A stretch of 64,000 nucleotides of DNA from Ranitomeya imitator (lineage: Eukaryota). The notes below the pieces were generated by a model. It worked only from the letters and a program-made list of their open reading frames with translations. It ran no database searches and was not told the DNA's origin. The stretch covers positions 43,338,001-43,402,000 of the forward strand of contig NC_091290.1 in NCBI RefSeq assembly GCF_032444005.1, written 5' to 3'. A program made the translations under genes and the position numbers. Below, piece by piece: positions 4,640-34,164 of this stretch. The stretch's first letter is position 1, and every line of letters starts with the position of its first letter.

Positions 4640-5160
4640 TTGTTTAGGCAGAATCAATGGAGGAGCTTGTATCTGGAGATGAAACTGAATCATACCTGTA
4701 GATGAAAAACAAAATATATTTATGTCACAAAACCATTGCTGCAAATTATTATTTATTTTTAATTTTAGAAGGTTCAGCTTCTTTTTATACTAGAGATTTA
4801 TCTCATCTTGATAACCCCCTTTGTGTTTCATTGGTGCATGTATATGTTGTATAGGAGGACCCCTGCTCGGGATCCTCTCTTTCAGCCATAGACCAATAAG
4901 AAGGAAACTGAACATATGGTCAAAGAACAAAGAGTATGACGATAGAATTAAGGCTAAAATACCTTTTATTAGTGAGAGTAGGAAGAAGTAGCACTACATG
5001 CATAAAAAGGTGCCCGCACAAGTTAATAAAAAAGGAAATGAAATATGATTATACATAACAATAATAATACCTTAAAAACCGAACCAAAAGGTAATGGATG
5101 GGAAGATAATATATAAATATATTAGCATAAATAGCAGAGTAATTAGCAATTTATAAGAAA

Positions 5161-7827: not shown

Positions 7828-9111
7828 TTGAACTGTGACTTATTGCAAAGACTGTGCCACCAAAAATCCGCCATTGCCGCGCCGTGTGGAGCGCGAGGGG
7901 AGGAGCCAGCTGGAAAAGAGCACAGAGCTGAAGAGGGCGGTAAGATGCCGACCCCGGAAGGAGAACCTCAACCCCGACAGGTTAGCAAGGGGGGAAGAAC
8001 GGCCATGTCAGATCCCGGAGGAGCGGAGGCGGCGGCCACAGCTGCAGACTCGGGAGCACTTCTAGATTCCGTGGTAGACGCAGCCACGGGTCTGATCTCA
8101 CCGCCGGATGCCGCGGGGCCTGCCGCTCCCATCAACCAGCCGGATACTGCCGCCGCTACAACAGCCATAATGTCCTTCTCTATGCCGTACCTACCAGGGG
8201 CCGCCTGGCTCCCACGATACTTCGGAGAAGCTCATACGTTAACTGACTTTAAAGAGGGGATTTGTAACCTGCTCGCGTTTTATCCCTTGACGGAGCCTCA
8301 GAAAGTTCATATGATAACCGGCCAACTCTTTGGAGCGGCATTGAGGGAAGTGAAGTCCTGGCCCGCTGCAGACAAGAAAACTGCGCAACAGGTATTTGCA
8401 AAGCTTAAAACCACCTTTGACACCCGCACCGCTACGGAAATTAAATTGACGTTCTATGGGTGCAAGCAGAGCCCGCAGGATAGCTTACAGGACTATGCCC
8501 TTAATCTTCAGGAGGCGCTGCGGGCCATCAAGCAAAGTGACCCAAACAGCATGCAAGATGAAGATAAACTCCTGAAGGAGCGGTTCGTCGAAGGGCTCCT
8601 GTGCAGTAACCAAAGGGCCCAGCTACACTTCCTGGCCATGCAGAACCCAGACCTGACTTTTGCACAATTCAAAGATAAAGCTATCCAGACACTACCAGAG
8701 CGACAGCCCAGCCGCGCCACACTTCCCAGGCGTCAAGCCCTCACGTACCACCAGGAGAAGGCGCCGGACGCACCCGTCTCCGCCGAGGCCGATGCTCAGA
8801 TCCTGGAAGACGACTCCGCTGCAGGACTGCGCCTCCAGGTACAGGAACTGACCAGGAGCGTTGCTGCCCTAGCCCGGACCGTCCAGTCCCTACAGGAGGC
8901 CCCCAAGGAGAAGATCCAGCTGGCTTCCAGACCGGAAGATGTCCTCTGGCAGCGACCAAGGAGAGTTCCATCGACCAGAGGCAGAGACGATGATCATTTT
9001 CATCGGGATGGATGACCTATCTGCCGCCGCTGCCACCAGGTGGGCCATCTTGCAAGGTACTGTCAGTTAAACGAGCAACCCCTGGGGCCAAGGGCCGACC
9101 CCCAGGAGTAG
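7828..9111 (+). pseudogene. Gypsy A gag with premature stop
   Basis: Retrotransposon gag-like ORF. The CCHC knuckle (CRRCHQVGHLARYC) lies in frame just after TGA at 9013-9015, probably CGA>TGA; the next stop is TAG at 9109-9111. Confidence 0.85.
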
Positions 9112-11031
9112 AACGCCAAGGCCCACAATGGAGAGCCAAATACATCGGGGGGCATCCAGTTCTCCCCATCGTGATCGACGGTATCCCCATGAACGCTTTG
9201 CTGGACACTGGTTCCCAGGTGACAACTATGCCTTACATTCTTTATAGACGTTATTGGGAGGACACCGACATTACCCGTGCCCCCGATGATGATTTCACCA
9301 TAATAGCTAGTAATGGCCAGCCGCTGCCGCAAGTGGGGTATAAAGAGGTCACTATTAAGGTGGGGCGGGTAGAATTGGAGGCCCAAGGAATTGTCATTGT
9401 TGATATTGACCGACGCGAATGTAACCCCATGATGACCATCGGTACTAATGTCATAGAAAATTGTCTTGCAGAAGTTATTGTCTTGTTGCAGCAAGTAGCA
9501 GAGGCAGCTGGTTACAGTGAACAACGTGCCTTGCAGAAAGAAATCAGAGCCCTAATGCGGAGACAGCAGGTGGAGCTGACTGGTGGTGAAATTGGCCGGG
9601 TCACAGTGAGTGATTCGAACCCCATTGCAATACCCCCCAGGAGTGAAATGTTAATATGGTGTCGGGCAGCCATAGGCCTCGGGGGTAAAGACTATCAGGC
9701 CCTGGTAGAACCTGTGTATTCGGAGAATAGGCCTACCCTCCTGACAGCCAGAGGGGTGGTTGACGTTCGCAAAGGGAGGGTGCCGGTACGTGTTCTTAAC
9801 TGCGGGGAGGAGGAAGTCCACCTAACCAAATATGTTACACTTGCCAAGCTGTTTACTGTTAATAATAGTGTGATACAGGCACCCGGGCCCTTGGCTCCGT
9901 GCAAGTTGGTGGAGGACAACGGCTCTGCAGAGCAATCAAAGGATTGGTGTCAAGAATTACATGTGGGCACTGATGCTACTCCATCTCACCAGATACAGGG
10001 GGCCTACAGGGTGGTTCACGAGTATGAGCGGGTATTCAGCAAACACCCCCTTGATTTTGGGCGGGTAAAAGGGATTCAACATCACATCCCCACAGGAGAT
10101 CACCCACCCGTAAAAGAAAGATACCGTCCTGTACCCCCAGCTCATTATCAGTGTGCCAAGGACATGTTGTGAGAGATGAAGGAGGCTGGGGTAGTGAGAG
10201 ACAGCTGTAGCCCCTGGGCAGCTCCATTAGTCATCGTTAGGAAGAAAGATGGCACCATGAGGATGTGTGTGAATTATAGGCAATTAAACCGCATTACACA
10301 TAAGGACGCATACCCCCTGCCTAGGATAGAGGAGTCCTTGGCTGCGTTAAAGTCTGCTTATTACTTCTCTACCTTAAGGTACCTTCACACTGAACAATAT
10401 TACAACGATAACGATAGCGATCCGTGACGTTGCAGCGTCCTGGATAGCGATATCGTTGTGTTTGACATGCAGCAACGATCAGGATCCTGCTGTGACATCG
10501 CTGGTCGGAGCTAGAAGGCCAGAACTTTATTTCGTCGCTGGATCAGCCGCTGACATCGCTGAATCGGCTTGTGTGACGCCAATCCAGCGATGTGTTCACT
10601 GGTAACCAGGGTAAACATCGGGTTACTAAGCGCAGGGCTGCGCTTAGTAACCCGATGTTTACCCTGATTACCATTGTAAATGTAAAAAAAAAAAAAAGCA
10701 CATACTCACATTCTGGTGCCTGTCACGTCCCCCGGCGTCCGCTTCCCTGCACTCCTCCTGCATCCTGTGTCAGCGCCGGCCAGCCGTGAAGCAGAGCACA
10801 GCAGTGACGTCACCGCTCTGCTTTACGGCCGGCGCTTAGTAACCCGATGTTTACCCTGGTTACCCGGGGACTTCGGCATCGTTGGTCGCTGGAGAGCTGT
10901 CTGTGTGACAGCTCTCCAGCGACCACACAAGGACTTTCCAACGATTACGGCTAGGTCGTATCGCTGGTCGTGATCGTTGGAAAGTTGCTGAGTGTGACGG
11001 TACCTTTAGATCTCACCAGTGGGTACTGGCA
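9012..11031 (+). pseudogene. Gypsy A pol (protease and start of RT), disrupted
   Basis: Protease motif LLDTGS. In-frame TGA at 10170-10172. RT motifs SPWAAPLVIVRKKDG and YFSTL|DLTSGYWQ are split by a MITE, and the RT is truncated at ~11031. Confidence 0.9.
10377..11005. mobile_element. Harbinger-type MITE inserted in Gypsy A RT
   Basis: TIR AGGTACCTTCACACT / AGTGTGACGGTACCT, TTA TSD (10374-10376 and 11006-11008). Removing it restores TACCTTAGATCTC (TL-DL). Internal ~70-bp hairpin at 10600-10672. Confidence 0.93.
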
Positions 11032-12293: not shown

Positions 12294-13049
12294 GAGTTCT
12301 TCCAAAGTTTCTCTGTAATATAGTCTTCATGAATAGAGTTTTCAAAGGCGAGATAAAACTTGTACTGTGACAACGTTTGTCCATGTTTATTTCTTGGCAG
12401 AGGTAAATCCTGCCTTCCATAAATGTCTACCGATAGAAATTTCTTTAGTTCCTGATAATAGCGTACTCTTTTAGAACCTGGATTCCAGTTACTTATTGCC
12501 CAGGCCACCAGCTTGGTCTTTGGAGGAATTTGGAAGGTATCTTCTTCTTTATTTGGATCTAACCACCATAAGGTGAGAAAATATCTGAGTCAGCTCTGTA
12601 AGACATTGTGAGGTTGATAAGATCATCCATAAAATGCAAATTTGGGCTATGTGATGGAGACTCCAAGTTAAACCAAACCCAGTACTGATTTGGTGGTCTT
12701 GGCATCTGGGGTAATTGTTTTCTGGAATTACAAACATCTCTGTGATGCATAACAATTTCATCTGCGGAAGAATATAATGATCTGTTAGCTGTATAGAAGC
12801 ATCCAGAAATATCAGTGTATGGGGGACATTCATTAAGTGGAAATTTTTCACCAAATGGCCACGTCCAAACAAGGATGATCTTAGTATTGTTAGCTGTTTC
12901 CTGGGGGATACTTGTATATGAAACTTACTGCTAACCAATGAGCGATTTCCATAGTTAAAGAGTGAAAAGTAAATGGTTGAGAGGAACAGTTGTGCAATCA
13001 AAATGATAAAAGCATTCCTGTATGTCAGAGTTTTCCCTTGCTGCTCCAT
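12294..13049 (-). pseudogene. Fucosyltransferase copy 2, pseudogene
   Basis: Highly similar to copies 1 and 3. Two 1-nt deletions (near 12925 and near 12565). Truncated after ITEKLWKN by the Gypsy B LTR; the 3' ~100 codons are absent from the window. Confidence 0.93.
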
Positions 13050-14417
13050 TTGTTTAGGCAGAATCAATGGAAAAAGATTGTATCTGGAGATGAAACTAAG
13101 AAGTATCATACCTGTAGGAGAAAAACAAAATACATTTATGTCACAATAACATTGATGTAAATTATTATTTATTTTTAATTTTAGAATGTTCAGCTTCTTT
13201 TTATACTAGAGATTTATCTCATCTTGATAACCCCCTTTGTGTTTCATTGGTGCATGTATATGTTATATAGGAGGACCCCTGCTCGGGATCCTCTCTTTCA
13301 GCCATAGACCAAAAAGAAGGAAACTGAACATATGGTCAAAGAACAAAGAATATGACAATAGAATTAAGGCTAAAATACCTTTTATTAGTGAGAGTAGGAA
13401 GAAGTAGCGCTACATGCATAAAGAGGAGCCCGCACAAGTTACTAAAAAAGGAAATTAAACATGATTATACATAACAATAAAAATACATTAAAAACCAAAC
13501 CATAAGGTAATGGATGGGAAGATAATATATAAATTTATCAGCATAAATAGCAGAGTAGTTAGCAATTTATAAGAAATAACAAGGCCCACAAGAAAAGATG
13601 GCTCACAGTAGAAGTGTAACCGACAATGACTCACCGTATGTGTGAAATAGGACAGTCATCTGGATGTAAGGGTACCGTCACACAGTGCAATTTTGATCGC
13701 TACGACGGCACGATTTGTGATGTTCGAGCGATATAGGTACGATATCGCAGCGTGTGACACGCTCCTGCGATCAGGGACCCCGCTGTGAATCGTACGTCGT
13801 AGCACATCGTTTGAAACTTTCTTTCGTCGTCTAGTGTCCCGCTGTGGCGGCATGATCGCATGGTGTAACAAAGGTGTGCACGATATTGTATACGATGTAA
13901 AGGGCGGAGGAGCTGGCTACGTAGGAGCGCTAAATTCTCCACCTCCTGTGTGCTGATTGGGCGGTACAATACTGTGCGCTCATTCGACAGACAAAGGACT
14001 ATTGTTCCCAGCGGATAAAACCGGAGCTGTCGAGCGCTCTCTTCATTTCTCTCTGGAGCACGTGCTGGAAACAGAACTCCTAAATTCGCTGGATTCCCTG
14101 GACTTTGATAACTACTATACAGACTTTTACGGCAAGAGGTATGTATAACGCTACAGCGTAGCAGATGTTGCGCTTCAACGGGGATAAACGCTGGAGCGTG
14201 GTCGATTGTTCCTTTATGGAGAGTAGGGTAGAAGGCCAGAGAGCCTCAGGTACACAGCTGTAGCGTGGCCCAATTAATTAATCCTTTTTCAGATCGAGCT
14301 GTAGCATGGTTCACTGCCCCGTTTATGCCAGTAGTAATATAGTTATTAGATCAATGGTCAAAACATTGTTTTGTAAGCACGTGTATTTATTGTACGTTTG
14401 TTTTCTTTTTAGGAACT

Positions 14418-16145
14418 ATGCTCACTTCCGATGAGAGTTCTGTTGTTGCTGCTGCCCTGGTGTTTGAGGCAGCACGTCTCCAAGAGGAGAGACGTCCTAA
14501 ACGAAAACGTCGCATGTGGACCCGGAGCTGGCTGCAGAAAAGATCCACATTGTCACACATGGGTCTCATAAGAGAGTTACGTGATAATAATCCACATGAT
14601 TTCCGAAACTACCTTAGGATGTCAGAGGAATCATTCAAGATAATACTGTCTGCTGTTACGCCACTCATACAAAGGAGTGATACGCCGATGCGTGCAGCCG
14701 TGCCCGTGGATGAAAGGTTGGCGGTGACACTGCGGTTCCTGGCTACAGGAAGGTCTCTTCAGGATTTGCAGTTTTCCGCAGCTGTTTCCAGACCTTTCCT
14801 CAGCGTTGTGATTCCGGAGACATGCGCGGCCATTGTGCAGAGCTTAAGGCATTATATGGAGGTACTACTATTTAATTTGGGCTGCTGTGTTATGTCGATA
14901 TATTATACTAGCTATGTAACCCGTTCTACGGCCTGGCGGCGCACATTTCTATTGGTATCTGTTCTCCATCCTATCATGAGCTGCTCCCATCCTGTGCCCC
15001 CATTCTGACATGTGCTGCTGCGATCCTGCGCCTCCATTCTGACATGTGCTGCTCACATTTTGCGGCTCCATTCTGATATGTGCTGCTCCAATCCTGCGCC
15101 ACCCTTCTTTTATTTGCTGCTCCCAACGTAATTTAATAGGCTATATTATTTCGATATATTGTTTTGCACCCCCTCTCAGTCAGTGAAGCCGTTTCCTAAA
15201 TTGGCTGCCTGCATATTCAGGATTGTTGACTTTGTTATACTAATCAAAACTATGCGTCAATCTCTCTAGGATGTCCACATGAGAGTGTATGTGCACAACA
15301 ATATATTTGACCTAATTTGTACATGTTTCCTTCTCATCCTGCAGTTTCCCAAGTCGGCGGAGGACTGGAAGAAGATTGCTTCCGATTTTGATCAGCTGTG
15401 GCAGTTTCCAAACTGCGGTGGTGCATTAGATGGAAAGCATGTGCGCATCACACAACCAGCCAACTCTGGATCCTTTTTTTTCAACTACAAAGGATATTTC
15501 AGTGTGATCCTCATGGCCCTTGTCAATGCAAACTATGAGTTCGTAGATGTGGATGTTGGCATGAATGGTCGAGTCTCCGACGGTGGAGTTTTTGATCACA
15601 CTTCATTTGGGGAAAGCTTGAGGAACAATCAACTGCAGTTGCCAATAAATGAAGACACAAAAGCAAACCTCAATTTTGTTTTCATCGCTGATGAAGCTTT
15701 CCCTCTTCATCCACATTTGCTGAAGCCATTTGCGCAGAGAACACTCACACCGGAGCGCCGAATCTATAATTACCGGTTGTCGAGGGCCCGTCGTGTAGTT
15801 GAAAATGCCTTTGGGATAATGGCTAATCGGTTTAGAGTGTTCCACACAGCTATCAACTTGAAGCTGCCGTCTATAGACTTTGTGGTTTTGGCATGCTGTG
15901 TGCTCCATAATTTCCTGAGACGTCATGATACGAGCTCCTATTCTCCTCCTTCGTTTATTGATGCAGTGGACCCAAGAACCGGAGATATTGTGCCCGGGGA
16001 ATGGCGTACACAACCTGATAATTTAACAGCTCTTCAAGCACTCGGATCTGGCAGACAGGCAGACGATGCAAGGGACTGTCGAGAAAAATACTGTCAGTAC
16101 TTTAATGGTTCTGGAGCTGTACCCTGGCAGGATCACGCCGTATAA
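14418..16145 (+). CDS. Harbinger DDE transposase (HARBI1-like), 2 exons, 414 aa, open
   Basis: Exon 1 14418-14861 (GAG|GT), exon 2 15345-16145 (CAG|TTT), phase 0. Motifs GALDGKHV, FIADEAFPL and RRVVENAFG give a complete D-D-E triad; N-terminal HTH-like region RLAVTLRFLATG. Confidence 0.92.
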
Positions 16146-16606: not shown

Positions 16607-18307
16607 TTATCTTCTGCCACGGTCTAACAGGTGTCGCAGCGTCACACCCTGCTGCTCTACTTGAGCCTGGAGGAGCGCTGCTGGCTGCTGCAGGAGCGCT
16701 GCTGTACGCTCCAGGCGTAGTTGTCTGGCCAGGAGCTCTGTCACGGTGGGCAGTTCTGTGGATAGAAGAGGTTGGAGAACTGATGGTGATTCCGCTGAAA
16801 ATACATATTGACCTCTGTTGCTGGACCAAATTGAGTGTGTTGTAAATTTCTATTTGGTCCGGGCACACAGGGCATTTTGTTTTTAAATTAAATTTTACAG
16901 TTTCAGTTGTCAATTGTGACATTCCACCGAGATATCCACTCGTATTATCTTAATACTTACGGAGAAGGGACGCCGGTTCTTCGTTGCCAGAACCACTACT
17001 GCTTATTTCCCATCCATGACATCTGGCCACTGCTGCAACAGCTAAAAGGAAATAATAACAGATCTGGTTAACTATGGAACACTCCGTTGCAAAGCGCTCG
17101 CTGTTTTGGTCTCTTACGTATGGTAGCTTCTGGGGAGAAGACCGCCGACCCGGGGGTGGAAAATGAGGGCCGGAAGGGAGGTGTTGAGGGTGGTGTTGGG
17201 GTGCGAGGCTGCATGGTCAATAAAGATGTAGAGGTCCCGGGCTCTGGGCTGCTGCTGGTGGCGGATGAAGGAGAGCTTGTCTCAATGAGAGGTGCCTGTT
17301 GCCGACGCCTTCTCTCTACACATAAATGAAACAAACAAAATGTTTAGACATTCCTATACTGTATGTTCTAAACCAAGTGCAGAGCAAAGGGAATCATTGC
17401 AACCAATACGGTTCCTGCTTTAATTAGTCAAAAAAGTCTAATGAACGCTGTGTTCTGATCGTGTTTTCCAGCAGCATTTGGAGAAGTTGTAACAGAGAAG
17501 CTTGTCTTTTATATGTGTAGTACTGTGTGTGCCCCATATTGTGTGCTCCGTACGATGTGTACGTGGTTCTGTGTGCGGCACGGTGTGTACGTCGTTGTGT
17601 GCGCGTCGCGCTGTGTGTGCTACATATTATGTGCGGCACGGTGTGTATGCCGCAGTACTAGAAGAGCATCACGGCTGTGCGCGTCTACTGATTAGCTGCC
17701 ATTATTTCCCCTCCGGGCACTGTTCGCGCAGGATAATGTATGCAATATGTACGCTACACTGTTATGTCACCTATGCTATAATTACATTTCTATGAGTGAT
17801 GGTACACTTACGTGAGGTCCCGGGCTGTGGCCTGATGCTGTTGGTGGATGAAGGACAACTGGCAGCAATGGCAGGTCTGTGTTGCCGTCGCCTTCTCTCT
17901 ACACATAAATGAAAGAAAAGCAATGTTTTAAAAACAAAGAACAGGGATTCCAGAGCCCCCCCCAAAAAAAATAGCGCGCAGGGTGGCCAACCTCCTCGTA
18001 AAAGCGTGCATCGCCCAATTCCCCCATACTGGTACTTGCCTCGCCTTGTCTCCGCACGCAACTCAGCCAGAAGGTGTGGATTTTTGTGGCGGAGGTCGGC
18101 CCATTTCTTACGCAACTGCTGCGCACTCCGGCGGACGCCAAACCTCCTATCCAGCATTTTCCCAATGCGACGCAGCACCTCCTGCTTATGTTGGTTCGGG
18201 TGTGCTGGGATAGTCTTCTGGCATTCATAATCAAGGGCATCCATGCGATGTACCAAAAACCGGAGCTCGGTGTGCCCCAAAGGGGCAGATCTCTGTCTTC
18301 CAGCCAT
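16607..18307 (-). CDS. Element-borne Myb/SANT-like (trihelix) protein A with C-terminal coiled coil, 5 exons, 273 aa
   Basis: Exons 18307-18040, 17898-17812, 17315-17118, 17041-16961 and 16794-16607, all phase-1 junctions, no stops. Domain ...KQEVLRRIGKML..GVRRSAQQLRKKWADLR; last exon ELLARQLRLERTAALLQQ... Confidence 0.8.
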
Positions 18308-18600
18308 TACAGATAAAAAGACGTTATAAAGCAGCACCTAACCACGCCCAGAGGAAGTCCTTAACTATGCATTTCTCCCGCGCGATCCGCATCGCTATAG
18401 CGTTGCCGTTTATGGACAGCGTCACTTTTGTGACGTCTGAGAGTGACAGAAGGAACGCACATAGTAAATGACGCTCGAACGATGTAGATATTACGCCGGT
18501 GCGGCACGTAATGTGCGCTCGTGGTATATGACGGCGTGATGACGTTACAACGTTCCTGCGTGCCTGCGCTACCTTGCTTTGCTTCCCTGACATCCTTAAA
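18308..18600. promoter_or_regulatory. Probable bidirectional promoter between Myb genes A and B
   Basis: 293 bp separate the divergent ATGs. CpG-rich, with several TGACG half-sites. Function is inferred. Confidence 0.55.
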
Positions 18601-20099
18601 ATGGCTGCCAGGCGACGTGATTCTCCTATGGGTGTCCCAGAGCTAAAGTTCATGATTAGCACTATGGATCGGATGCGTTACGAAACCACAGGGCTGGTGC
18701 TGCACCGCAACCAGCACAAGGATGAAGTCGTACGTGTGGTGTCTGAGGGCCTCAGGAAGCAGTTTGGGATAACCAGAAGTAAGGCCCAGATTGTGAAGAA
18801 ATGGGGCGATCTTAAATCCAAAAGCCCAGCGCGCCTGCAGGAGCTTCGCCGCGAGATCCGCAGTGGTGAGTACGCAGGTACCCAAAAGTATTGCACGCCG
18901 AAGGGTTAATTGGGTGTGTATGTGGTGTGTATGTGGCCCTGCTATGGTGCAATAATGAAAGGTGCAGAGCACTTTTTTGCCATGCTATGGTGCAATAATG
19001 AATGGTGCAGAGCACTATGTGGCCCTGCTATGGTGCAATAATGAACGGTGCAGAGCACTATGTGGCTCTGCTGTGTTTCCACAATGAACGGTGCAGAGCA
19101 CTATGTGGCTCTGCTGTGTTTCCACAATGAACGGTGCAGAGCACTAGGTGGCCCTGCTGTGGTGCAACAATGAACGGTGCACAGCACTATGTGGCCCTGC
19201 TGTGGTGCAATAATGAATGGTGCAGAGCACTTTTTTGCCATGCTATGGTGCAATAATGAATGGTGCAGAGCACTATGTGGCCCTGCTATGGTGCTATGCT
19301 AACAGACCTTTTTTTTTTTTTTTTCCTTCACAGAGGCAAAGAGACAGCGTCGCCGCCACGAGGCATCCCACACCACCACAGATATTGCTGTGCCCTCCGG
19401 GTCAACGGCTCAACAACCCAGTAGGTTCACCCAATAATGTGATTATGATTTGTTGGAAGGTGCCCTCCCCCCCCCCCCCCCACCTGCAGTCACTGTTACC
19501 ATTTATGTAAAAAAAAATTTTTTATTTTTTCCCTTCACAGAGGCAAAGACACAGCGCCGCCGTCGAGTGTACCAGGCCTTTGACACGGACTCAGATCCAG
19601 ACTTGCCCTCCGTGCCTACAGATCCTAGTAGGTTCCCACAATAATGTGATTTGAATCTGGTGGCAGGTCCCCTATTCCCCCCCCCACCTGCAGTGACTGT
19701 TGCCATTTATGTAAAAAAAATTTTTTTTTTTTTTCCCCTCACAGAGGCAACGACACAGCGTCGCAGCCACGAGGCTTCCCACCCCGCCTCACATGTCCGT
19801 GTGCCCTCTGGGTCAACAGCTGAACAACCTAGTAGGTTCCCACAATAAGGCCGGCGTCACACACAGCGTAAAACAATACGGTCCGTATATTACGGCCGTA
19901 ATACACTGAAAAGTCCCGAAAAAAGTGGTCCGTAGCTCCTCCGTAGGCAGGGTGTGTCAGCGTTTTTTGCGCATGGCATCCTCCGTATGTAATCCGTATG
20001 GCATCCGTACTGCGTGGTTTTCTCGCAGGCTAGCAAAACCAACATACCGCTATAGAAGTGATCCATGTGTCCCAAAAAGAAAAGAAAATATATATATAC

Positions 20100-20159
<60 letters not shown>

Positions 20160-23100
20160 AGTAGACACATATATTAGAGAGAAAAGCCGGTAATTCAGTG
20201 CGGTGTACAGTAAAATCACACTGACAGCTTACAGTAGAATAGGTAGAATAAATGTGTACACATAGAATAGGTATATATATATATATATGTCAGTGAGACA
20301 CATATATGTATATATATTAATATTTATTCCAGCGCTAGACAGCTTGAAAGCCGGTAATTCAATTACCGGCTTTTTCCTTCTCCTTCCTAAAACCCGACAT
20401 GATTTGAGACATGGTTTACATACAGTAAACCATGTCTTCTCTCCATTTTTTTTGCAGATTCCACACTACTAATGTCAGTAGTGTGTATCTGCAAAATTTG
20501 GCCGTTCTAGCTCTTAAAATAAAGGGTTAAATGGCGGAAAAAATTGGCGTGGGCTCCCGCGCAATTTTCTCCGCCAGAGTAGTAAAGCCAGTGACTGAGG
20601 GCAGATATTAATAGCCTGGAGAGGGTCCATGGTTATTGGCCCCCCCCTGGCTAAAAATATCTGCCCCCAGCCACCCCAGAAAAGGCACATCTGGAAGATG
20701 CGCCTATTCTGGCACTTGGCCACTCTCTTCCCATTCCCGTGTAGCGGTGGGATATGGGGTAATGAAGGGTTAATGCCACCTTGCTATTGTAAGGGGACAT
20801 TAAGCCTAATTAATAATGGAGAGGCGTCAATTATGACACCTATCCATTATTAATCCAATTGTAGTGAAGGGTTAAATAAAACACAAACACATTATTTAAA
20901 ATTATTTTAATGAAATAAAAACAATGGGTGTTGCAGTATTTTATTCAACGCCCAATCCAGTCACTGAAGACCCTCGTTCTGTGAGTAAAAAAACATAATA
21001 AACCAACAATATACTTACCCTCCGCAGATCTGTAACGTCCAACGATGTAAATCCTTCTGAAGGGGTTAAAACATTTTGCAGCAATGCAGAAAGCCAGGGA
21101 GCTTTCTAGGTAATTTCCCACGATCTATGAACAGCCAGCAGAGGGCGCCTCACCGCAAATAAAGCTAAATATAGATCATTGATCTATTTTTAGCCTCATT
21201 CCCTGGGGTTTTGCAGCGAGGAGCAGCCTGCATTAGCACAGCTCCTTGCTGCAAAATGTTTTAACCCCTTCAGAAGGGTTTACATCGTTGGACGTTACAG
21301 ATCTGCGGAGGGTAAGTATATTGTTGGTTTATTATGTTTTTTTACTCACAGAACGAGGGTCTTCAGTGACTGGATTGGGCGTTGAATAAAATACTGCAAC
21401 ACCCATTGTTTTTATTTCATTAAAATAATTTTAAATAATGTGTTTGTGTTTTATTTAACCCTTCACTACAATTGGATTAATAATGGATAGGTGTCATAAT
21501 TGACGCCTCTCCATTATTAATTAGGCTTAATGTCACCTTACAATAGCAAGGTGGCATTAACCCTTCATTACCCCATATCCCACCGCTACACGGGAATGGG
21601 AAGAGAGTGGCCAAGTGCCAGAATAGGCGCATCTTCCAGATGTGCCTTTTCTGGGGTGGCTGGGGGCAGATATTTTTAGCCAGGGGGGGCCAATAACCAT
21701 GGACCCTCTCCAGGCTCTTAATATCTGCCCTCAGTCACTGGCTTTACTACTCTGGCGGAGAAAATTGCGCGGGAGCCCACGCCAATTTTTTCCGCCATTT
21801 AACCCTTTATTTTAAGAGCTAGAACGGCCAAATTTTGCAGATACACACTACTGACATTAGTAGTGTGGAATCTGCAAAAAAAATGGAGAGAAGACATGGT
21901 TTACTGTATGTAAACCATGTCTCAAATCATGTCGGGTTTTAGGAAGGAGAAAGAAAAAGCCGGTAATTGAATTACCGGCTTTCAAGCTGTATAGCGCTGG
22001 AATAAATATTAATATATATACATATATGTGTCTCACTGACATATATATATATATACCTATTCTATGTGTACACATTTATTCTACCTATTCTACTGTAAGC
22101 TGTCAGTGTGATTTTACTGTACACCGCACTGAATTACCGGCTTTTCTCTCTAACAGCGCTGCGTATTTCTCGCAAGTCACACTGCTTGTCCGTGTGTAAT
22201 CCGTATTTTTCACGCTTCCATAGACTTTCATTGGCGTATTTCTTGCGCAGTACGGTGACAAACGCAGCATGCTGCGATTTTGTACGGCCGTAGAAAGCCG
22301 TATAATACTGATCAGTAAAATACGGCAAATAGGAGCAGGGGCATAGAGAATAATTGTGCCGTATTTTTTGCGAGTTTTACGGACGTAGATTCTGCGCTCT
22401 TACGTCCGTAAAACTCGCATGTGTGACGCCGGCCTAATGTGTTCAGGATTTGGTGGCAGGTCCCCTCTTTCCCCCCCCCCCCTCCCCCGGCAGCAAGTGT
22501 TGCCATATATGCTAACAGACCTTTTTTTTTTTTTTCCATTCACAGAGGCAAAGACACAGCACCGCAGCCACGAGGCTTCCCACCCCGCCTCACATGTCCG
22601 TGTGCCCTCTGGGTCAACAGCTGAACAACCTAGTAGGTTCCCACAATAATGTGTTCAGGATTTGGTGGCAGGTCCCCTCTTTTTCCCCCCCCCCCCCGGC
22701 AGCAAGTGTTGCCATATATGCCAACAGACCTTTTTTTTTTTTTTTTCCCTTCACAGAGGCAAAGACACAGCGCCGCAGCCACGAGGCTTCCCACCCCGCC
22801 TCACATGTCCGTGTGCCCTCTTGGTCAACAGCTGAACAACCTAGTAGGTTCCCACAATAATGTGTTCAGGATTTGGTGGCAGGTCCCCTCTTTCCCCCCC
22901 CCCCTCCCCCGGCAGCAAGTGTTGCCATATATGCTAACAGACCTTTTTTTTTTTTTTCCCTTCACAGAGGCAAAGACACAGCGCCGCAGCCACGAGGCTT
23001 CCCACCCCGCCTCACATGTCCTTGTGCCCTCTGGGTCAACAGCTGAACAACCTAGTAGGTTCCCACAATAATGTATTCAGGATTTGGTGGCAGGTCCCCT

Positions 23101-23790
23101 CTTTTCCCCCCCCCTCCCCCGGCAGCAAGTGTTGCCATATATGCTAACAGACCTTTTTTTTTTTCCCTTCACAGAGGCAAAGACACAGCGCCGCAGCCAC
23201 AAGGCTTCCCACCCCGCCTCACATGTCCGTGTGCCCTCTGGGTCAACAGCTGAACAACCTAGTAGGTTCCCACAATAATGTGTTCAGGATTTGGTGGCAG
23301 GTCCCCTCTTTTCCCCCCCCCCCTCCCACGGCAGCAAGTGTTGCCATATATGCCAAAAGACCTTTTTTTTTTTTCCTTCACAGAGGCAAAGAGACAGCGC
23401 CACCGCCGACAGCACGAGGCATTCGACACCGACACAGATCCCGAAGTGCCCTCCGTGCCTCAACATCCTAGTAGGTTCCCACAATAAAGTTATTTTGATT
23501 TTGTTGCAGGCCCACTCTTTCACCCCCAACCCAAACCCCCCCCCCCCCCCCAACTCAGTTTTGCTTACTTTTTTTGTATTTATTTTACTTCACAGAAGCA
23601 AAGACACATCGGGAGACTACTGTGTTATTAATGTTATGTTTTTTGACCCACAGCTGTCGTCACTGTCAACAAGGAGGATATTGAAGCCGGCATAGAAAAG
23701 TTACTCCACACTATGGCACATATTCAGGAGCAGCACAATGTGGCAATGGAGGAGCTGCAGAAGCTGCGGGACATGTGCCAGCAGTTGTAG
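18601..23790 (+). CDS. Element-borne Myb/SANT-like protein B with repeat linker and C-terminal coiled coil, 10 exons, up to 365 aa
   Basis: Exon 1 18601-18865 (G|GTGAGT). Eight 87-nt exons: 19334-19420, 19541-19627, 19745-19831, 22546-22632, 22757-22843, 22968-23054, 23175-23261, 23384-23470. Last exon 23654-23790 (EDIEAGIEKLLHTMAHIQEQHNVAMEELQKLRDMCQQL*); AATAAA at ~23821. Confidence 0.78.
18930..19294. repeat. 43-bp minisatellite in intron 1 of Myb gene B
   Basis: About 8 copies of CTATGTGGCCCTGCTATGGTGCAATAATGAACGGTGCAGAGCA and variants. Confidence 0.9.
19849..22434. mobile_element. Non-autonomous Harbinger-type element with ~900-bp internal inverted repeat, nested in an intron of Myb gene B
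   Basis: TIR GGCCGGCGTCACAC, TAA TSD (19846-19848 and 22435-22437). Arms ~20175-21086 and ~21246-22152 are near-identical reverse complements. Confidence 0.95.
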
Positions 23791-24031
23791 GCGGGCCAAT
23801 AATCCATATTTTGTTGTTACAATAAAAATATTTTGTTAAACTATCATTCCATTTTTTTTGTATTACTTAACTGTACATGAATTTGTTACGTTAATTTGTG
23901 CCCTCATACAGTGCTGTGATTGAGACACACCAATCAAAAAGTAGTGATAGAATTTATAATAAAAGCTTTTATTTGAAACATTATTTTAACAAGACAATAA
24001 AATAAAAAGGAATGTAAAAGAAGCTAGGAAA

Positions 24032-25455
24032 TCACAAATTATGATACGACGATTGTTCCCGCTGAAAACTTTGGTGCCTGATGGGCGAAGCCATATCTAA
24101 AGGTATTGGCGTGTAGGAGTTATTAGGGGGTGGATGGCCGAAGTGGGAAACGTGAGCATTGTGTCGCATCGATGTCTGACACTGTGACCAACCATTGTAA
24201 TTTGATGGCTCTGTCCGCTGTATTGGCCGGGAAGAGACCAAACAAGTGTTCTTGTCCAAATCGCCATCAGTACCCTTGTTTACTGCTTCCAGAATCAGAC
24301 GCTCTGCTAGTATTCTTTGGTTGTCGTCCATTTTTGCCAGTTTGTCAACCACATAGTGTCCAAACCCCTCTAACGCAGGGCTAACATTTCTTGTCAACAC
24401 CTTCTTTGCAAGGCTCAATAGTTCATTTGAGGCGTCTGAGGTGGCTTTCCGTTTTCTTGGACCTTGCCTCGATTGAGTCCTGGCAGGTGCAGCCTCCACT
24501 AAATCTGTTGTCGTGCAGTCCTGTGAACAGTCCAGTGTACTCTCCTGCGCACTGTCATCCTGGGGGGGGGGGAAAAAAAAAACAAGTTATGAACCCGGCA
24601 ACAAAAAGTAGTACCACCATAACCGCATCCAAACTATATATTCGTAGTAGGTAACAAAAAGATTATAATATATTTGATGCTTAGTAATATTCTTTAACCC
24701 TCCCTTTTATTGAATACTTTGAACTACACTGTTCTGACTGTTAGGTGAACCTGACCAATATTTTATAGTCTAAATAGTCTCAACAAGAGTACATCGGCAG
24801 CTTGAAGCGATACTATTTTCTATATTGCTTAGATGGTATGGTTTACATATATCGCCATTTCATACATATTAAGTTCCCCATATAATACTTGACTGCGACA
24901 GGGTTACTTATGTGTACATGTTTTTGTAACAACTTCAAACTGATGTGATAATCAGAAGTATAAAACCTAAAATGCAGAGAAACATTATGTAATTATAGGA
25001 CACATTGGTGAACTTTCGTCCAAAGAGCTACTTACTTGTTGCCCTTGTGACTCCTGCTCGGCGTGGTTCTCCGAAACTATTGGTTCCACAGGTGACAACA
25101 ACCGAAGACACGTGGAAGTCCGTGGCACCTCTTGGTCCCTCAGAAAATTAAGATGCTCAAAATACCAAAGTTTTGGCACATAAACTTCTTCAGTGGAAGC
25201 TCCGGACCTTGTAGTCTGAAGAACCTTGTTCAGCTCCTTCCTCCACACCGTGCGGAGCGCCTGGATTTTCTTTTTAATAACTGCTTCGTTAGCTGCCTCA
25301 TCTGGTGCATGACGATTGTAAAGCTCAATGAGCTGTAAGTAACCCTCCCTCCTCTTTTCCCTGTTACAATACTCAGGAGACTTGATTTTCCTGAGGCAGG
25401 GAAAAGACTGATAAATCTCGATGAAATCCCTGATGAACTCCACACGATTAGACAT
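24032..25455 (-). CDS. MADF-domain protein, the usual Harbinger partner, 2 exons, 315 aa
   Basis: Exon 1 25455-25036 (CAA|GTAAGT), exon 2 24559-24032. MADF motifs FIEIYQSFPCLRKIK and KKKIQALRTVWRKE...YVPKLWYFEHLNFL. BESS-like FGHYVVDKLAKMDDNQRILAERLI. Confidence 0.88.
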
Positions 25456-26480: not shown

Positions 26481-27451
26481 TCCACCACGCCCAAGCGGTT
26501 TACATACCTCGAAGCAGCGGTGCAAAGCGTGGTATATTCAGCGAAGTAGAAAATTCCAATGTCCAGGTCCACCAAGTGTCCAAGTACGAAGTGAAGAAAG
26601 GAAATTTTGAAAGCAGTGAGGTAGCATTGGGAACAATAGCGCTCAGGTGACAAATTTTCCAACCAATTGTGTGCACAGAACCTTTGGCCTATCAGCACAC
26701 TAGCTAGTAGCACAACACGCCCCTAGTGAACAACGTCACGCACAGATTATGCAAAATTTGCTCTGAATCGTCGTGTGTGACACGACCGTACGACTGTCCC
26801 ATACGACTTCTACATCGCAAATACGTCATGAATTTATCGCTTCAGCGCCGTGCATCGTGTTGTGTGACCGCAGTCTACGATGTTTGAAACGATAATTAAG
26901 CGACGATGTAACGTCACAAATCGTGCCGTCGTAGCGATCAAAATTGCACTGTGTGACGGTACCCTAAGAGTATCAGAGGAAACAGTAACTGTGCTATATA
27001 CAATGAAGGAAAATAGACACCACAGGGATGTAAATTCATGTAAAGGTACAAACAAAGGTCACTATAAGGTTGTGTATTTTGTCCATAGTGTATAGAAGCA
27101 GGAGATGCAAGACCTACAAAAAAAGTCATTATAATTGCAATATATTGATAGGGCAAGTAGGTAGAAGGAGGAGATGCACAACCTGTGGGGTACAACTATC
27201 CAGAGAAGGATGGAATACTGCGAATATGGGCACAATAGATTACCTGTATGGTTCATGGTCCTGGTACGGCGCACACCCCGATGCATGTTTTGGAACGTGT
27301 CCTCTTTATGCATGTAGTGCCACTAATAATGGTATTTTAGCCTTAATTCTATTGTCCTACTCTTTGTTGTTTCACCATATGTTCAGTTACCCTCATTTTG
27401 GTCTTCACAATTCCCAAATGGTCTTCTATTCTTCCCTGTACAGCAGATATA

Positions 27452-33108: not shown

Positions 33109-34164
33109 TCATTTGTACCATTCTCCAAGTTTTGAAATAGTTTTGTTTGGCGGAGCCTCTTTTAGTGCTTTACACACCCTGCAGTAATGAGTCTGCCAAG
33201 GACCACTTCTACAGGGATGAAATCTGGATCTCCATGAAAAATACTGTTGGTAAGCTTTCTCATCACCGTCTAACTTCAAGATATATTTAGCGAGCTCTTC
33301 AGCTGTGGAGAAGTCATCTACGTGGATAAAAGAGTCTTTTGGAATATAGCGTTCATAATTTTTCCGAGTAGGACCAAGAACAACTGGTACGCATCCATAT
33401 ATCAATGCGTTCTTCCAAAGTTTCTCTGTAATATAGTCTTCATGAATAGAGTTTTCAAAGGCGAGATAAAACTTGTACTGTGCCAACGTTTGTTCAAGTT
33501 TATTTCTTGGCAGAGGTACATGCTGCCTTCCATAAATGTCTACAGATAGAAATTTCTTTAGTTCCTGATAATAGCGTACTCTTTTAGAACGTGGGTTCCA
33601 GTTACTTATTGCCCAGGCCACCAGCTTGGTCTTTGGAGGAATTTGGAAGGTATCTTCTTCTTTATTTGGCTCTAACCAACCATAAGGTGAGAAAATATGT
33701 GAGTCAGCTCTGTAAGACATTGTGATGTTGATAAGATCATCCATAAAATGCAAATTTGGGCTATGTGATGGAGACTCCAAGTTAAACCAAACCCAGTACT
33801 GATTTGGTGGTCTTGGCATCTGGGGTAATTGTTCTCTGTAATGACAAACATCTCTGTGATGCATAACAATTGCATCTGCGGAAGAATATAATGATCTGTT
33901 AGCTGTATAAAAGCATCCAGAAAAATCAATGAATGGGGGACATTTATTAAGTGTAAATACATCACCAAATGGCCACGTCCAAAGAAGGATGATCTTAGTA
34001 TTGTTAGCTGTTTCCTGGGGGATACTTGTATATGAAAACTTACTGCTAACCCACGAGCGATTTCCATAGTTAAAAAGTGAAAAGAAAATGGTTGAGAGTA
34101 ACAGTTGTGCAATCAAAATGATAAAAGCATTCCTGTATGTCAGAGTTTTCCCTTGCTGCTCCAT
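33109..34164 (-). CDS. Alpha-1,3-fucosyltransferase (GT10, FUT3/5/6-like), copy 3, 351 aa
   Basis: Same motifs as copy 1; 35 of 351 residues differ. Acceptor at 34227-34226. Confidence 0.95.
   Translation of the reverse strand: MEQQGKTLTYRNAFIILIAQLLLSTIFFSLFNYGNRSWVSSKFSYTSIPQETANNTKIILLWTWPFGDVFTLNKCPPFIDFSGCFYTANRSLYSSADAIVMHHRDVCHYREQLPQMPRPPNQYWVWFNLESPSHSPNLHFMDDLINITMSYRADSHIFSPYGWLEPNKEEDTFQIPPKTKLVAWAISNWNPRSKRVRYYQELKKFLSVDIYGRQHVPLPRNKLEQTLAQYKFYLAFENSIHEDYITEKLWKNALIYGCVPVVLGPTRKNYERYIPKDSFIHVDDFSTAEELAKYILKLDGDEKAYQQYFSWRSRFHPCRSGPWQTHYCRVCKALKEAPPNKTISKLGEWYK

What the first reader, a model, noticed from the sequence alone, without database searches (positions are those of the whole stretch)
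19295..23600. A minisatellite whose unit is a complete exon-intron cassette: eight 87-nt symmetric exons
Seen: each ~210-bp unit has a polypyrimidine tract + CACAG, an exon of exactly 87 nt, then GTAGGT. All eight exons keep length, phase 1/1 and an open frame (e.g. KAKTQRRSHEASHPASHVRVPSGSTAEQP), while indels fall only in the intronic poly-C/poly-T runs. The exons form diverged sequence classes (SH-rich versus acidic DTDSDPD-type). Inference: selection keeps a tunable disordered linker with repeated basic motifs; exon skipping or unequal crossover could give many isoforms from a transposon gene.
Basis: partly seen in the sequence, partly recalled or inferred. Interest (0 to 1): 0.78.

Follow-up and report, generated by a model that had tools for sequence, protein, structure and literature searches.

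The report
Repeated exon array in frog transposon gene
A helper gene inside a Harbinger jumping gene of a Ranitomeya poison frog has multiplied one 87-base exon plus its short intron eight times; the copies are spliced into a floppy protein spacer, and nothing shows that the spacer length is selected.

Summary
Eight exons of exactly 87 nt sit in ~210-bp head-to-tail units. Each has a T-rich tract plus CACAG in front, GTAGGT behind, and the same phase (1/1). One 2.6-kb transposon insertion splits the array.

The array is the middle of a real gene. A Myb/SANT-like three-helix head exon (18601-18865) precedes it and a C-terminal helix exon (23654-23790) follows. The gene lies in a 13.3-kb PIF/Harbinger transposon (TIRs, TAA duplication, DDE_Tnp_4 transposase).

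- **Splicing:** transcriptome-like contigs give GT..AG joints exactly at exon4->exon5 and exon8->last exon.
- **Other copies:** NCBI proteins from other Ranitomeya copies join the same head, 1-5 such units and the same tail. One R. variabilis isoform pair differs by exactly one 29-residue unit.
- **Structure:** an AlphaFold model of a 5-unit copy shows the array as disordered coil.

The selection claim is not supported.
- Exons are no better conserved than introns (74-82% against 82-88% in old pairs).
- pN/pS is 0.64-0.80.
- Non-homopolymer intron sequence lacks indels too.
- A second frame is also open in all eight exons.

The scan found this array before on other DNA of the same genome (s1-312579). 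I read it as a tolerated, copy-number-variable disordered linker: a new member of a known kind.

The parts
13670..13720 (.). Left terminal inverted repeat of the 13.3-kb PIF/Harbinger element, with the TAA target duplication at 13667-13669
   Evidence: A k-mer diagonal gives about 51 nt of perfect match to the right end. The sequence was read.
26914..26964 (.). Right terminal inverted repeat, with TAA at 26965-26967
14418..16145 (+). Harbinger transposase gene in two ORF blocks, carrying the DDE_Tnp_4 domain
   Evidence: Pfam PF13359, E = 3.9e-32
17812..17898 (-). Single 87-nt phase-1 exon of the mirrored sister gene. It starts with a basic RRRRQH motif and marks the ancestral state of the repeated exon.
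18601..18865 (+). Exon 1 of the array gene: ATG, 88 codons and 1 base, then donor G|GTGAGT. It encodes the Myb/SANT-like three-helix head.
   Evidence: It is 93% identical to the head of P0002. The paralog model shows three helices with pLDDT >90.
18930..19294 (.). 43-bp satellite (8.5 copies) in intron 1
19334..19420 (+). Array exon 1, 87 nt, S/H-type (older form)
19541..19627 (+). Array exon 2, 87 nt, acidic type
19745..19831 (+). Array exon 3, 87 nt, S/H-type. Its K->T change is shared with unit 3 of P0001 and P0002.
19849..22434 (.). Inserted element in intron 3. The TAA duplication is at 19846-19848 and 22435-22437. The termini resemble the host Harbinger TIR. It holds an inner hairpin of about 900 nt that is 99-100% complementary.
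22546..22632 (+). Array exon 4, 87 nt
   Evidence: One 212-nt contig covers exactly this exon with 58 and 67 nt of other sequence on its sides, and there is a joint 22632->22757.
22757..22843 (+). Array exon 5, 87 nt
22968..23054 (+). Array exon 6, 87 nt
23175..23261 (+). Array exon 7, 87 nt
23384..23470 (+). Array exon 8, 87 nt, acidic type. It resembles the acidic unit of P0003.
   Evidence: The joint from 23470 to the last exon appears in all four runs.
23591..23620 (+). Relic of the old acceptor (CACAG) and of the start of the long last exon of other copies. Read from here, the frame hits a stop, and the joints seen do not use it.
   Evidence: Sequence. The QYWPP..PPAGS segment of P0002/P0003/P0004 has no match in the window.
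23654..23790 (+). Last exon: C-terminal helix, stop TAG at 23788-23790
   Evidence: The acceptor is supported by joints in 4 runs. The corresponding helix in the P0002 model has pLDDT 84-94.
23821..23826 (+). AATAAA after the stop. Contigs run past it.

Best explanation
The array is the middle of a real, spliced gene. It is one of two head-to-head Myb/SANT-like (three-helix) accessory genes inside a 13.3-kb PIF/Harbinger DNA transposon of a Ranitomeya poison frog.

An ancestral 87-nt phase-1/1 exon is still single in the mirrored sister gene. Here it was multiplied head to tail together with its ~120-nt intron, by unequal recombination or slippage between ~210-bp units. Every unit brings its own long T-tract/CACAG acceptor and a moderate GTAGGT donor. 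Each copy is therefore spliced in and adds 29 residues: a basic start (KAKTQRR-type) and then an S/H/P-rich or acidic tail. Together the units form an intrinsically disordered spacer between the DNA-binding-type head and a C-terminal helix that I take to be a pairing helix.

Unit number differs between transposon copies, and units turn over within lineages. The unit sequence drifts almost neutrally. What is kept are the splice signals, the frame and the basic exon start. I read the array as a tolerated, copy-number-variable linker, not a tuned device.

**Shown:** the array anatomy, two splice joints, multi-unit proteins in other copies, one cassette-skipping isoform pair, predicted disorder, and near-neutral substitution.

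**Inferred:** the growth mechanism, the spacer or nuclear-import role of the basic motifs, and the lack of selection on length.
For: - **Anatomy and phase:**
- **Gene model:** exon 1 ends in phase 1 at a consensus donor, and the last exon continues the same frame to a stop.
- **Transposon context:** DDE_Tnp_4, ~51-bp perfect TIRs and a TAA duplication.
- **Splicing:** joint 22632->22757 (GT..AG) in X1. Joint 23470->23654 in four runs from four studies. One 212-nt contig covers exactly exon 4 between other sequence.
- **Other copies:** P0002 has the head, 5 units and the tail. P0001 has 3 units. P0003 has 3 units, one of them 33 residues long. P0004 and P0006 are isoforms X3 and X4 of one R. 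variabilis locus and differ by exactly 29 residues, with the junction residues expected for phase 1.
- **Unit turnover:** the young units read HVRV in the window but HVRA in P0001/P0002. That means independent expansion or homogenisation.
- **Ancestral exon:** the mirrored gene has one 87-nt phase-1 exon.
- **Disorder:** in the AlphaFold model of P0002, residues 124-290 are coil with pLDDT 44-55. The head has pLDDT >90 and the C-terminal helix 84-94.
- **Near neutrality:** exon identity is at or below intron identity. pN/pS is 0.64-0.80, and young units show 5 nonsynonymous to 1 synonymous change.
- **What is conserved:** the first 15 nt of the exon (0.92) and the donor region (0.90).
Against: - The runs are only guessed to be RNA. 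They are assembled contigs, so neither strand nor level is known.
- The contigs at the exon8->last-exon joint differ from the window at several bases. They come from another copy or allele, possibly from a chimeric host transcript.
- Intron-containing contigs occur at similar depth (for example 23545-23655 in X2). Intron retention or read-through transcription is therefore not excluded.
- No joint across the enlarged intron 3 was among the rows shown.
- NCBI models are predictions and are open by construction.
- pN/pS below 1, in-frame-only exon indels (6, 6 and 12 nt) and the exact 87-nt length shared even with the sister gene hint at some constraint on frame and length.
- There is no protein-level evidence.
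Confidence: 0.7

Rival explanations
1. One reading: selection maintains the array as a tunable module. Unit number and cassette skipping would give a graded series of linker lengths, or of basic (nuclear-import or DNA-contact) motifs, that matters for the transposon.
For: - The exact 87-nt length and phase are kept in diverged units and in the sister gene.
- Exon indels are all multiples of three.
- The basic exon start is the best conserved part.
- The donor matches the U1 consensus at only 6 of 9 positions, as is common for cassette exons (sequence).
- One annotated isoform pair skips a cassette.
- Harbinger Myb-like proteins are reported to import the transposase into the nucleus (PMC9392472).
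Against: - Exons are no better conserved than introns.
- pN/pS is 0.64-0.80 and not distinguishable from 1 with about 16 changes.
- Non-homopolymer intron sequence has no indels either.
- Relatives outside Ranitomeya have unrelated linkers without this array.
- Copies with 1, 3, 5 and 8 units all exist, with no sign of a preferred number.
- The conserved exon start could equally be a splicing enhancer.
Confidence: 0.15
2. In this particular copy the array is a decaying relic. The copy is not productively expressed, for example because the 2.6-kb hairpin-bearing insertion in intron 3 and the remodelled last exon disturb splicing. The RNA evidence would then come from other copies only.
For: - The contigs at the joints carry differences from the window.
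- The insertion is absent from the uninterrupted intron sequence of the neighbouring units.
- The stop comes four codons earlier than in other copies, and the QYWPP segment is lost.
- Exon 1 has depth in only 2 of 4 runs.
Against: - All ten exons of this copy are open and in phase, with intact splice signals.
- Two X1 contigs match exon 1 of this copy without a single difference.
- The same remodelled acceptor is used in all four runs, so the remodelled form is expressed somewhere.
Confidence: 0.1
3. Assembly artefact: a collapsed or expanded repeat, not a real eight-unit array.
For: Tandem repeats of ~210 bp at 97-99% identity are prone to mis-assembly.
Against: Each young unit has its own private substitution. 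The array is anchored by diverged units on both sides and by a unique insertion.
Confidence: 0.03

Closest known systems
Repetitive exon-intron pairs with homogenised introns in spider silk genes (MaSp2 of Argiope, flagelliform spidroins; PMC9779670)
   Same: The tandem unit is one exon plus one intron. Introns are as similar to each other as the exons, or more so. Unequal crossing-over between repeated introns is the proposed way in which units are gained, lost and homogenised. The encoded protein segment is repetitive.
   Different: The silk units are far larger and encode a structural fibre under strong selection and extreme homogenisation. Here the units are ~210 bp, encode a 29-residue disordered stretch, drift nearly neutrally and sit in a transposon gene, so 'alleles' are transposon copies.
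Titin PEVK exons (PMC6469411 and PMC3575840; the exon size of about 28 residues and the shared phase are from my own knowledge)
   Same: Many short exons each encode one ~28-residue unit of a disordered segment. Exons can be included or skipped without breaking the frame. Exon number changes by tandem duplication.
   Different: PEVK splicing is regulated (RBM20) and has a demonstrated mechanical role, and its introns are not a uniform minisatellite-like set. Here regulation and function are unshown.
Copy-number-variable multi-exon repeats such as LPA kringle IV-2 or NBPF Olduvai (own knowledge, not tested)
   Same: The repeat unit contains whole exons and introns, the copy number varies, and each unit adds an in-frame protein module.
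   Different: Those units are kilobases long and encode folded domains in host genes.
Myb/SANT-like (trihelix) second protein of PIF/Harbinger transposons, and its domesticated relatives NAIF1 and MSANTD1-4 (PMC9392472)
   Same: The gene is carried by a Harbinger with TIRs, a TAA duplication and a DDE transposase. The protein has a three-helix head of Myb/SANT type followed by a non-globular region.
   Different: This element also has a MADF gene, which may be the canonical partner. The array gene and its mirrored sister are extra genes. No described Harbinger protein has a tandem exon array, and the head does not reach any Pfam threshold.

Membership tests
Tandem exon-intron repeat array (tandem exon duplication encoding a repetitive protein segment) | Head-to-tail repeat whose unit holds one whole exon and one whole intron with its own splice signals | tested here: met
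Tandem exon-intron repeat array (tandem exon duplication encoding a repetitive protein segment) | Symmetric exons of one phase, so that any number of units keeps the frame | tested here: met
   87 nt, phase 1/1 in all eight. The X3/X4 isoform junction residues fit.
Tandem exon-intron repeat array (tandem exon duplication encoding a repetitive protein segment) | Units are joined in mature RNA | tested here: met
   GT..AG joints at exon4->exon5 and exon8->last exon, and one contig with exon 4 between other exonic sequence. NCBI models hold 3-5 units. Caveat: the runs are only guessed to be RNA, and most contigs come from other copies.
Tandem exon-intron repeat array (tandem exon duplication encoding a repetitive protein segment) | Unit number differs between copies or alleles | tested here: met
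   0/1, 3, 3, 5 and 8 units among Ranitomeya copies. Population-level variation at one locus was not tested.
Regulated cassette-exon array (titin-PEVK-like) | Documented alternative inclusion of units that is regulated and changes function | tested here: inconclusive
   Only one annotated isoform pair in R. variabilis. No skipping joint appeared among the rows shown for this locus.
Classical minisatellite (VNTR) | Unit of about 10-100 bp | tested here: not met
   The unit is 204-211 bp. 'Minisatellite' is used loosely in the finding.
Classical minisatellite (VNTR) | Hypervariable copy number between individuals at one locus | not tested
PIF/Harbinger transposon accessory Myb/SANT-like protein | Encoded inside an element with TIRs, a 3-bp TAA/TWA target duplication and a DDE_Tnp_4 transposase | tested here: met
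PIF/Harbinger transposon accessory Myb/SANT-like protein | Recognisable Myb/SANT/trihelix domain | tested here: inconclusive
   No Pfam hit for the window head or for P0002. 7 and 6 of 24 relatives give sub-threshold hits to Myb_DNA-bind_5 and Myb_DNA-bind_4. The AlphaFold model has three helices with pLDDT >90. The best Foldseek hits are the Zeste DNA-binding domain (TM 0.64-0.66, E = 0.45) and the GT-1 trihelix.
PIF/Harbinger transposon accessory Myb/SANT-like protein | Binds the transposon ends and brings the transposase into the nucleus | not testable with these tools
   Known for Harbinger3_DR according to PMC9392472. No data here.

The most novel reading that the evidence does not exclude
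Unit number is a selected, adjustable property of the transposon. Multiplying the basic motif and lengthening the spacer would change nuclear import, or the reach between the DNA-binding head and the pairing helix. Cassette skipping would give a graded isoform series, and lineages with more units would transpose differently. The same cassettes are also being captured into host transcripts, as in the R. variabilis chimera.
Probability: 0.12. Interest if true: 0.6.

Novelty: new member of a known kind. Interest (0 to 1): 0.4.

Why it matters
- **Transposon genes can grow exon arrays.** A DNA transposon's own gene can grow and shrink an array of spliced exons, as some host genes for repetitive proteins do. 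The many transposon copies in one genome provide a natural series of 0-8 units.
- **A test system.** That series could be used to test how linker length and repeated basic motifs affect a Harbinger accessory protein.
- **Annotation.** It explains odd names in frog genome annotations. These transposon proteins are labelled 'SRRM2-like' and 'anion exchange protein 3-like'.
- **Host capture.** At least one locus feeds transposon-derived cassette exons into a host-like transcript.
- **A caution.** An indel pattern confined to homopolymer runs is not evidence of selection.

Tried and rejected
- **The look-up of encoding contigs was closed.** I could not fetch the genomic DNA of the other copies (P0001-P0005).
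- **Read laying allows one call.** Only 15 of 25 joints and 32 of about 3,400 pieces were shown. Splicing across intron 3, skipping joints and the number of units per transcript stay unknown.
- **Word search with one exon** (an ORF that happens to contain exon 6), then with P0001 and P0002, found only five Ranitomeya proteins. No protein of the window itself was listed.
- **HMMER over 1.84 billion representatives** found 29 relatives. None outside Ranitomeya has the array.
- **Pfam** gives no domain for the head. Foldseek against PDB gives only weak trihelix hits.
- **The scan's notes by sequence** returned nothing.
- **Literature searches** for tandem exon duplication were mostly off target.
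- **Rejected: openness of the frame as evidence.** Frame 0 is open too.
- **Rejected: 'indels only in introns' as a sign of selection.** Exon classes differ by 6-nt indels, and non-homopolymer intron sequence has none.
- **Left tentative:** two 'goes back' joints (22563->19351 and 23433->22757). They probably reflect other copies with a 90-nt variant exon or another unit order, but I could not see the contigs.
Full report
**1. The observation**

The region was read in full. A pattern scan finds exactly eight segments bounded by CACAG and GTAGGT, and every one is 87 nt long. They lie at 19334-19420, 19541-19627, 19745-19831, 22546-22632, 22757-22843, 22968-23054, 23175-23261 and 23384-23470.

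Tandem Repeats Finder sees two arrays: 19310-19848 (period 204, 71% matches) and 22435-23401 (period 211, 95% matches). A 2,586-bp inserted element at 19849-22434 in intron 3 separates them. Its target duplication TAA is evident when intron 3 is compared with intron 4.

Each exon is preceded by 11-16 T, then CC(C)TTCACAG, and followed by GTAGGTTC. The introns are 117-124 nt.

The frame at offset 2 is open in all eight exons. Each reads 28 codons plus a junction codon A|AG (K), which means phase 1 on both sides. The frame at offset 0 is also open in all eight, so openness alone proves little.

Two exon classes exist: S/H-rich (units 1, 3-7) and acidic (units 2, 8). Units 3-7 are 97-99% identical in both exon and intron. 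The eight units therefore amount to about four independent lineages.

**2. What the array belongs to**

The array fits a coherent gene model.
- **Upstream exon.** An ATG at 18601 opens 88 codons and ends with one extra base at a consensus donor, G|GTGAGT (18865/18866). That is phase 1, matching the array.
- **Downstream exon.** The exon starting at 23654 continues the same frame through a helix-forming segment to TAG at 23788-23790.

The gene lies inside a PIF/Harbinger DNA transposon.
- Perfect ~51-bp terminal inverted repeats sit at 13670 and 26964, flanked by TAA on both sides.
- A DDE_Tnp_4 transposase lies at 14418-16145 (E = 3.9e-32).
- A MADF gene lies on the minus strand at 24985-25455.
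- A mirrored sister gene sits head to head with the array gene (17771-18337, minus strand; weak Myb_DNA-bind_5 hit).

The sister gene holds a single 87-nt phase-1 exon (17898-17812) that begins with a basic RRRRQH motif, followed by a 198-nt exon with the same start. So the 87-nt symmetric exon is older than the array. The array gene has multiplied it.

**3. Is it spliced?**

The look-up of sequencing runs lists runs of 60-250 Mb of contigs that are only guessed to be RNA. I laid four of them, from four studies, on 18500-23900. The informative rows are these.
- A joint 22632->22757 has GT..AG ends. This is exactly the end of exon 4 joined to the start of exon 5 (X1).
- A joint runs from 23470 (end of exon 8) to the last exon in all four runs. 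It is reported as 23470->23657 with the letters CTC between. That equals the acceptor at 23653/23654 with one substitution, G>C at 23656, which the table of other letters also lists.
- A 212-nt contig covers exactly exon 4 (22546-22632) with 58 and 67 nt on its sides that lie elsewhere.

These are what spliced transcripts would give. There are limits.
- The material is assembled contigs, and its RNA nature is a guess.
- The contigs at the last joint differ from the window at several bases, so they come from another copy or allele.
- Intron-containing pieces occur at similar depth, for example 23545-23655 in X2.
- Exon 1 has depth in only two runs.
- Only part of the output is shown. Nothing can be said about the joint across the enlarged intron 3 or about skipping at this locus.

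**4. Other copies**

Exons were searched by reference. An ORF that happens to contain exon 6 in frame found P0001, and P0001 and P0002 then served as queries. All hits are NCBI models from Ranitomeya (accessions).

| Protein | Species | Length | Composition |
|---|---|---|---|
| P0002 | R. imitator | 334 aa | Same head (93% identical to the window's exon 1), five units, a longer last exon |
| P0001 | R. imitator | 206 aa | Three units |
| P0003 | R. imitator | 233 aa | Three units; the acidic one has 33 residues, an in-frame +12 nt |
| P0004 | R. variabilis, LOC143807995 isoform X3 | 267 aa | One unit |
| P0006 | R. variabilis, LOC143807995 isoform X4 | 238 aa | No unit |

P0004 and P0006 differ by exactly 29 residues. 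Their junction residues, G-E...T-A against G-A-A, are what skipping a phase-1 cassette predicts. These two carry an acidic, lysine-rich N-terminus instead of the Myb-like head. It resembles nucleolin by my recollection only. At that locus the transposon's 3' exons are apparently part of a chimeric transcript.

Three points follow on unit history.
- The K->T change of unit 3 is shared by the window, P0001 and P0002. Units 1-3 are therefore ancestral.
- The young units read HVRV in the window and HVRA in P0001/P0002. Later units arose, or were homogenised, separately in each lineage.
- Unit 8 resembles the acidic unit of P0003, not unit 2.

The window copy lacks the QYWPP..PPAGS part of the long last exon of the other copies. 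It uses an in-frame acceptor inside what remains of that exon. The relic of the old acceptor is at 23591-23595. The window's stop replaces a glutamate codon four codons before the usual end.

A HMMER pass over 1.84 billion representative proteins finds only 29 relatives. Those outside Ranitomeya share the plan of head, non-globular linker and C-terminal helix, but they have other linkers. One of them carries an unrelated repeat.

**5. The protein**

I ran AlphaFold2 on P0002 with 24 aligned relatives.
- Three helices at 30-91, pLDDT about 86-98.
- A helix at 94-123 that runs into the basic start of the first unit.
- Coil with pLDDT 44-55 over the rest of the array (124-290).
- A C-terminal helix at 292-333, pLDDT 84-94.

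The best Foldseek hits are the Zeste DNA-binding domain (TM 0.64-0.66, probability 0.9, E = 0.45) and the GT-1 trihelix. These are weak but of the expected fold. Pfam gives nothing for this head and only sub-threshold Myb_DNA-bind_5/4 hits for some relatives. 'Disordered linker' is thus supported by the model. 'Myb/SANT-like' is likely but not proven.

**6. Selection or tolerance?**

The comparisons do not bear that out.

| Pair | Exon identity | Intron identity |
|---|---|---|
| Units 1-2 | 74% | 88% |
| Units 2-3 | 77% | 85% |
| Units 1-3 | 82% | 82% |
| Units 2-8 | 80% | 82% |
| Young units (3-7) | 97-98% | 96-99% |

Further points:
- pN/pS is 0.80 (units 1-3), 0.77 (units 2-8) and 0.64 (units 1-4). 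The young units carry five nonsynonymous changes and one synonymous change, against 62 nonsynonymous and 22 synonymous sites. None of this is distinguishable from neutrality.
- Intron indels sit in or beside the poly-C and poly-T/A runs. The roughly 75 nt of non-homopolymer intron sequence per unit has no indels either. The pattern is therefore the signature of homopolymer slippage.

Some things do hint at constraint.
- The two exon classes differ by a +6 and a -6 nt indel that keep both frame and total length.
- P0003's variant unit is +12 nt.
- The best conserved stretches of the unit are the first 15 nt of the exon (0.92 mean pairwise identity) and the donor region (0.90).

These hints point to constraint on the splice signals, the frame and the basic motif. 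The conserved exon start could equally be a splicing enhancer.

**7. How it most likely works**

Each unit is a self-sufficient splicing cassette.
- It has a long pyrimidine tract with AG.
- In the young introns a CTAAC branch-point-like motif lies about 30 nt upstream.
- The donor matches the U1 consensus at 6 of 9 positions.

Short introns favour joining neighbours, so all units would normally be included, adding 29 residues each. Identical sites and the common phase allow skipping without a frame penalty, as in the X3/X4 pair.

Units are gained and lost by unequal recombination or slippage between the ~210-bp repeats. This happens in transposon lineages, and new copies inherit the state of their source.

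The role of the product is inferred. It would be a flexible, basic-patch-bearing spacer between a DNA-binding-type head and a pairing helix. Its motifs could aid nuclear import, a function reported for Harbinger Myb-like proteins (PMC9392472).

**8. Comparison with what is known**

Repeated exon-intron pairs with homogenised introns are described in spider silk genes and several other repetitive proteins (PMC9779670). Arrays of short symmetric exons that encode a disordered segment and are variably spliced are the hallmark of titin's PEVK region (PMC6469411 and PMC3575840; details of phase are from my own knowledge).

The present case is another example of that kind. It has an unusually small unit, and it sits in a transposon gene. 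I found no description of that setting.

The scan itself found the same array before on another piece of this genome (s1-312579). Its conclusion agrees with mine.

**9. Housekeeping**

- The window holds no N.

**Verdict.** The exon-cassette reading and the copy-number variation are supported. Adaptive tuning is not supported. Interest is moderate.

Noticed in passing
window 19849-22434: A 2,586-bp element is inserted in intron 3, with a TAA target duplication. Its termini (GGCCGGCGTCACACA) resemble the TIR of the host Harbinger (GGGTACCGTCACACA). Inside it lies a hairpin of about 900 nt that is 99-100% complementary (arms 20174-21084 and 21246-22153). Its depth in the transcriptome-like contigs is very high. 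A long double-stranded RNA inside a transposon gene's intron could affect splicing or feed RNA silencing.
   Followed up: partly
window 18930-19294: A 43-bp satellite (8.5 copies, 89% matches) fills most of intron 1 of the array gene. It has depth in the hundreds to thousands in all four runs, so the repeat is abundant elsewhere.
   Followed up: no
P0004 / P0006 (R. variabilis LOC143807995, isoforms X3 / X4): A chimeric gene model. An acidic, lysine-rich host-like N-terminus is fused to the transposon gene's cassette exon and last exon. The two isoforms differ by exactly one 29-residue cassette.
   Followed up: partly
window 23471-23793: This copy has lost the QYWPP..PPAGS part of the long last exon seen in P0002, P0003 and P0004. 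It uses a new in-frame acceptor at 23653/23654. The relic of the old acceptor is at 23591-23595. The stop TAG replaces a glutamate codon four codons before the usual end.
   Followed up: partly
window 17118-17898 (minus strand): The mirrored sister gene has two exons that begin with the same basic RRRRQ motif: 87 nt at 17898-17812 and 198 nt at 17315-17118. This is a two-unit version of the same theme.
   Followed up: partly
P0002, P0003 (NCBI XP_069617890.1, XP_069610676.1): These transposon proteins are named 'serine/arginine repetitive matrix protein 2-like' and 'anion exchange protein 3-like'. The names are most likely misnomers caused by low-complexity similarity.
   Followed up: no
window 3584-4744, 12549-13109, 33109-34164 (minus strand): Tandem fucosyltransferase (GT10) gene copies. 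Two are full length (Pfam E = 2e-66 for the first) and one is a fragment. Transposons lie between them, including an LTR-type gag/protease at 7828-10172.
   Followed up: no
P0016 (relative found): A distant relative with the same head has an unrelated acidic repeat (EEEDGGQADHPPQT-type) in its linker. Repeat expansion in the linker of this protein family may therefore be recurrent.
   Followed up: no
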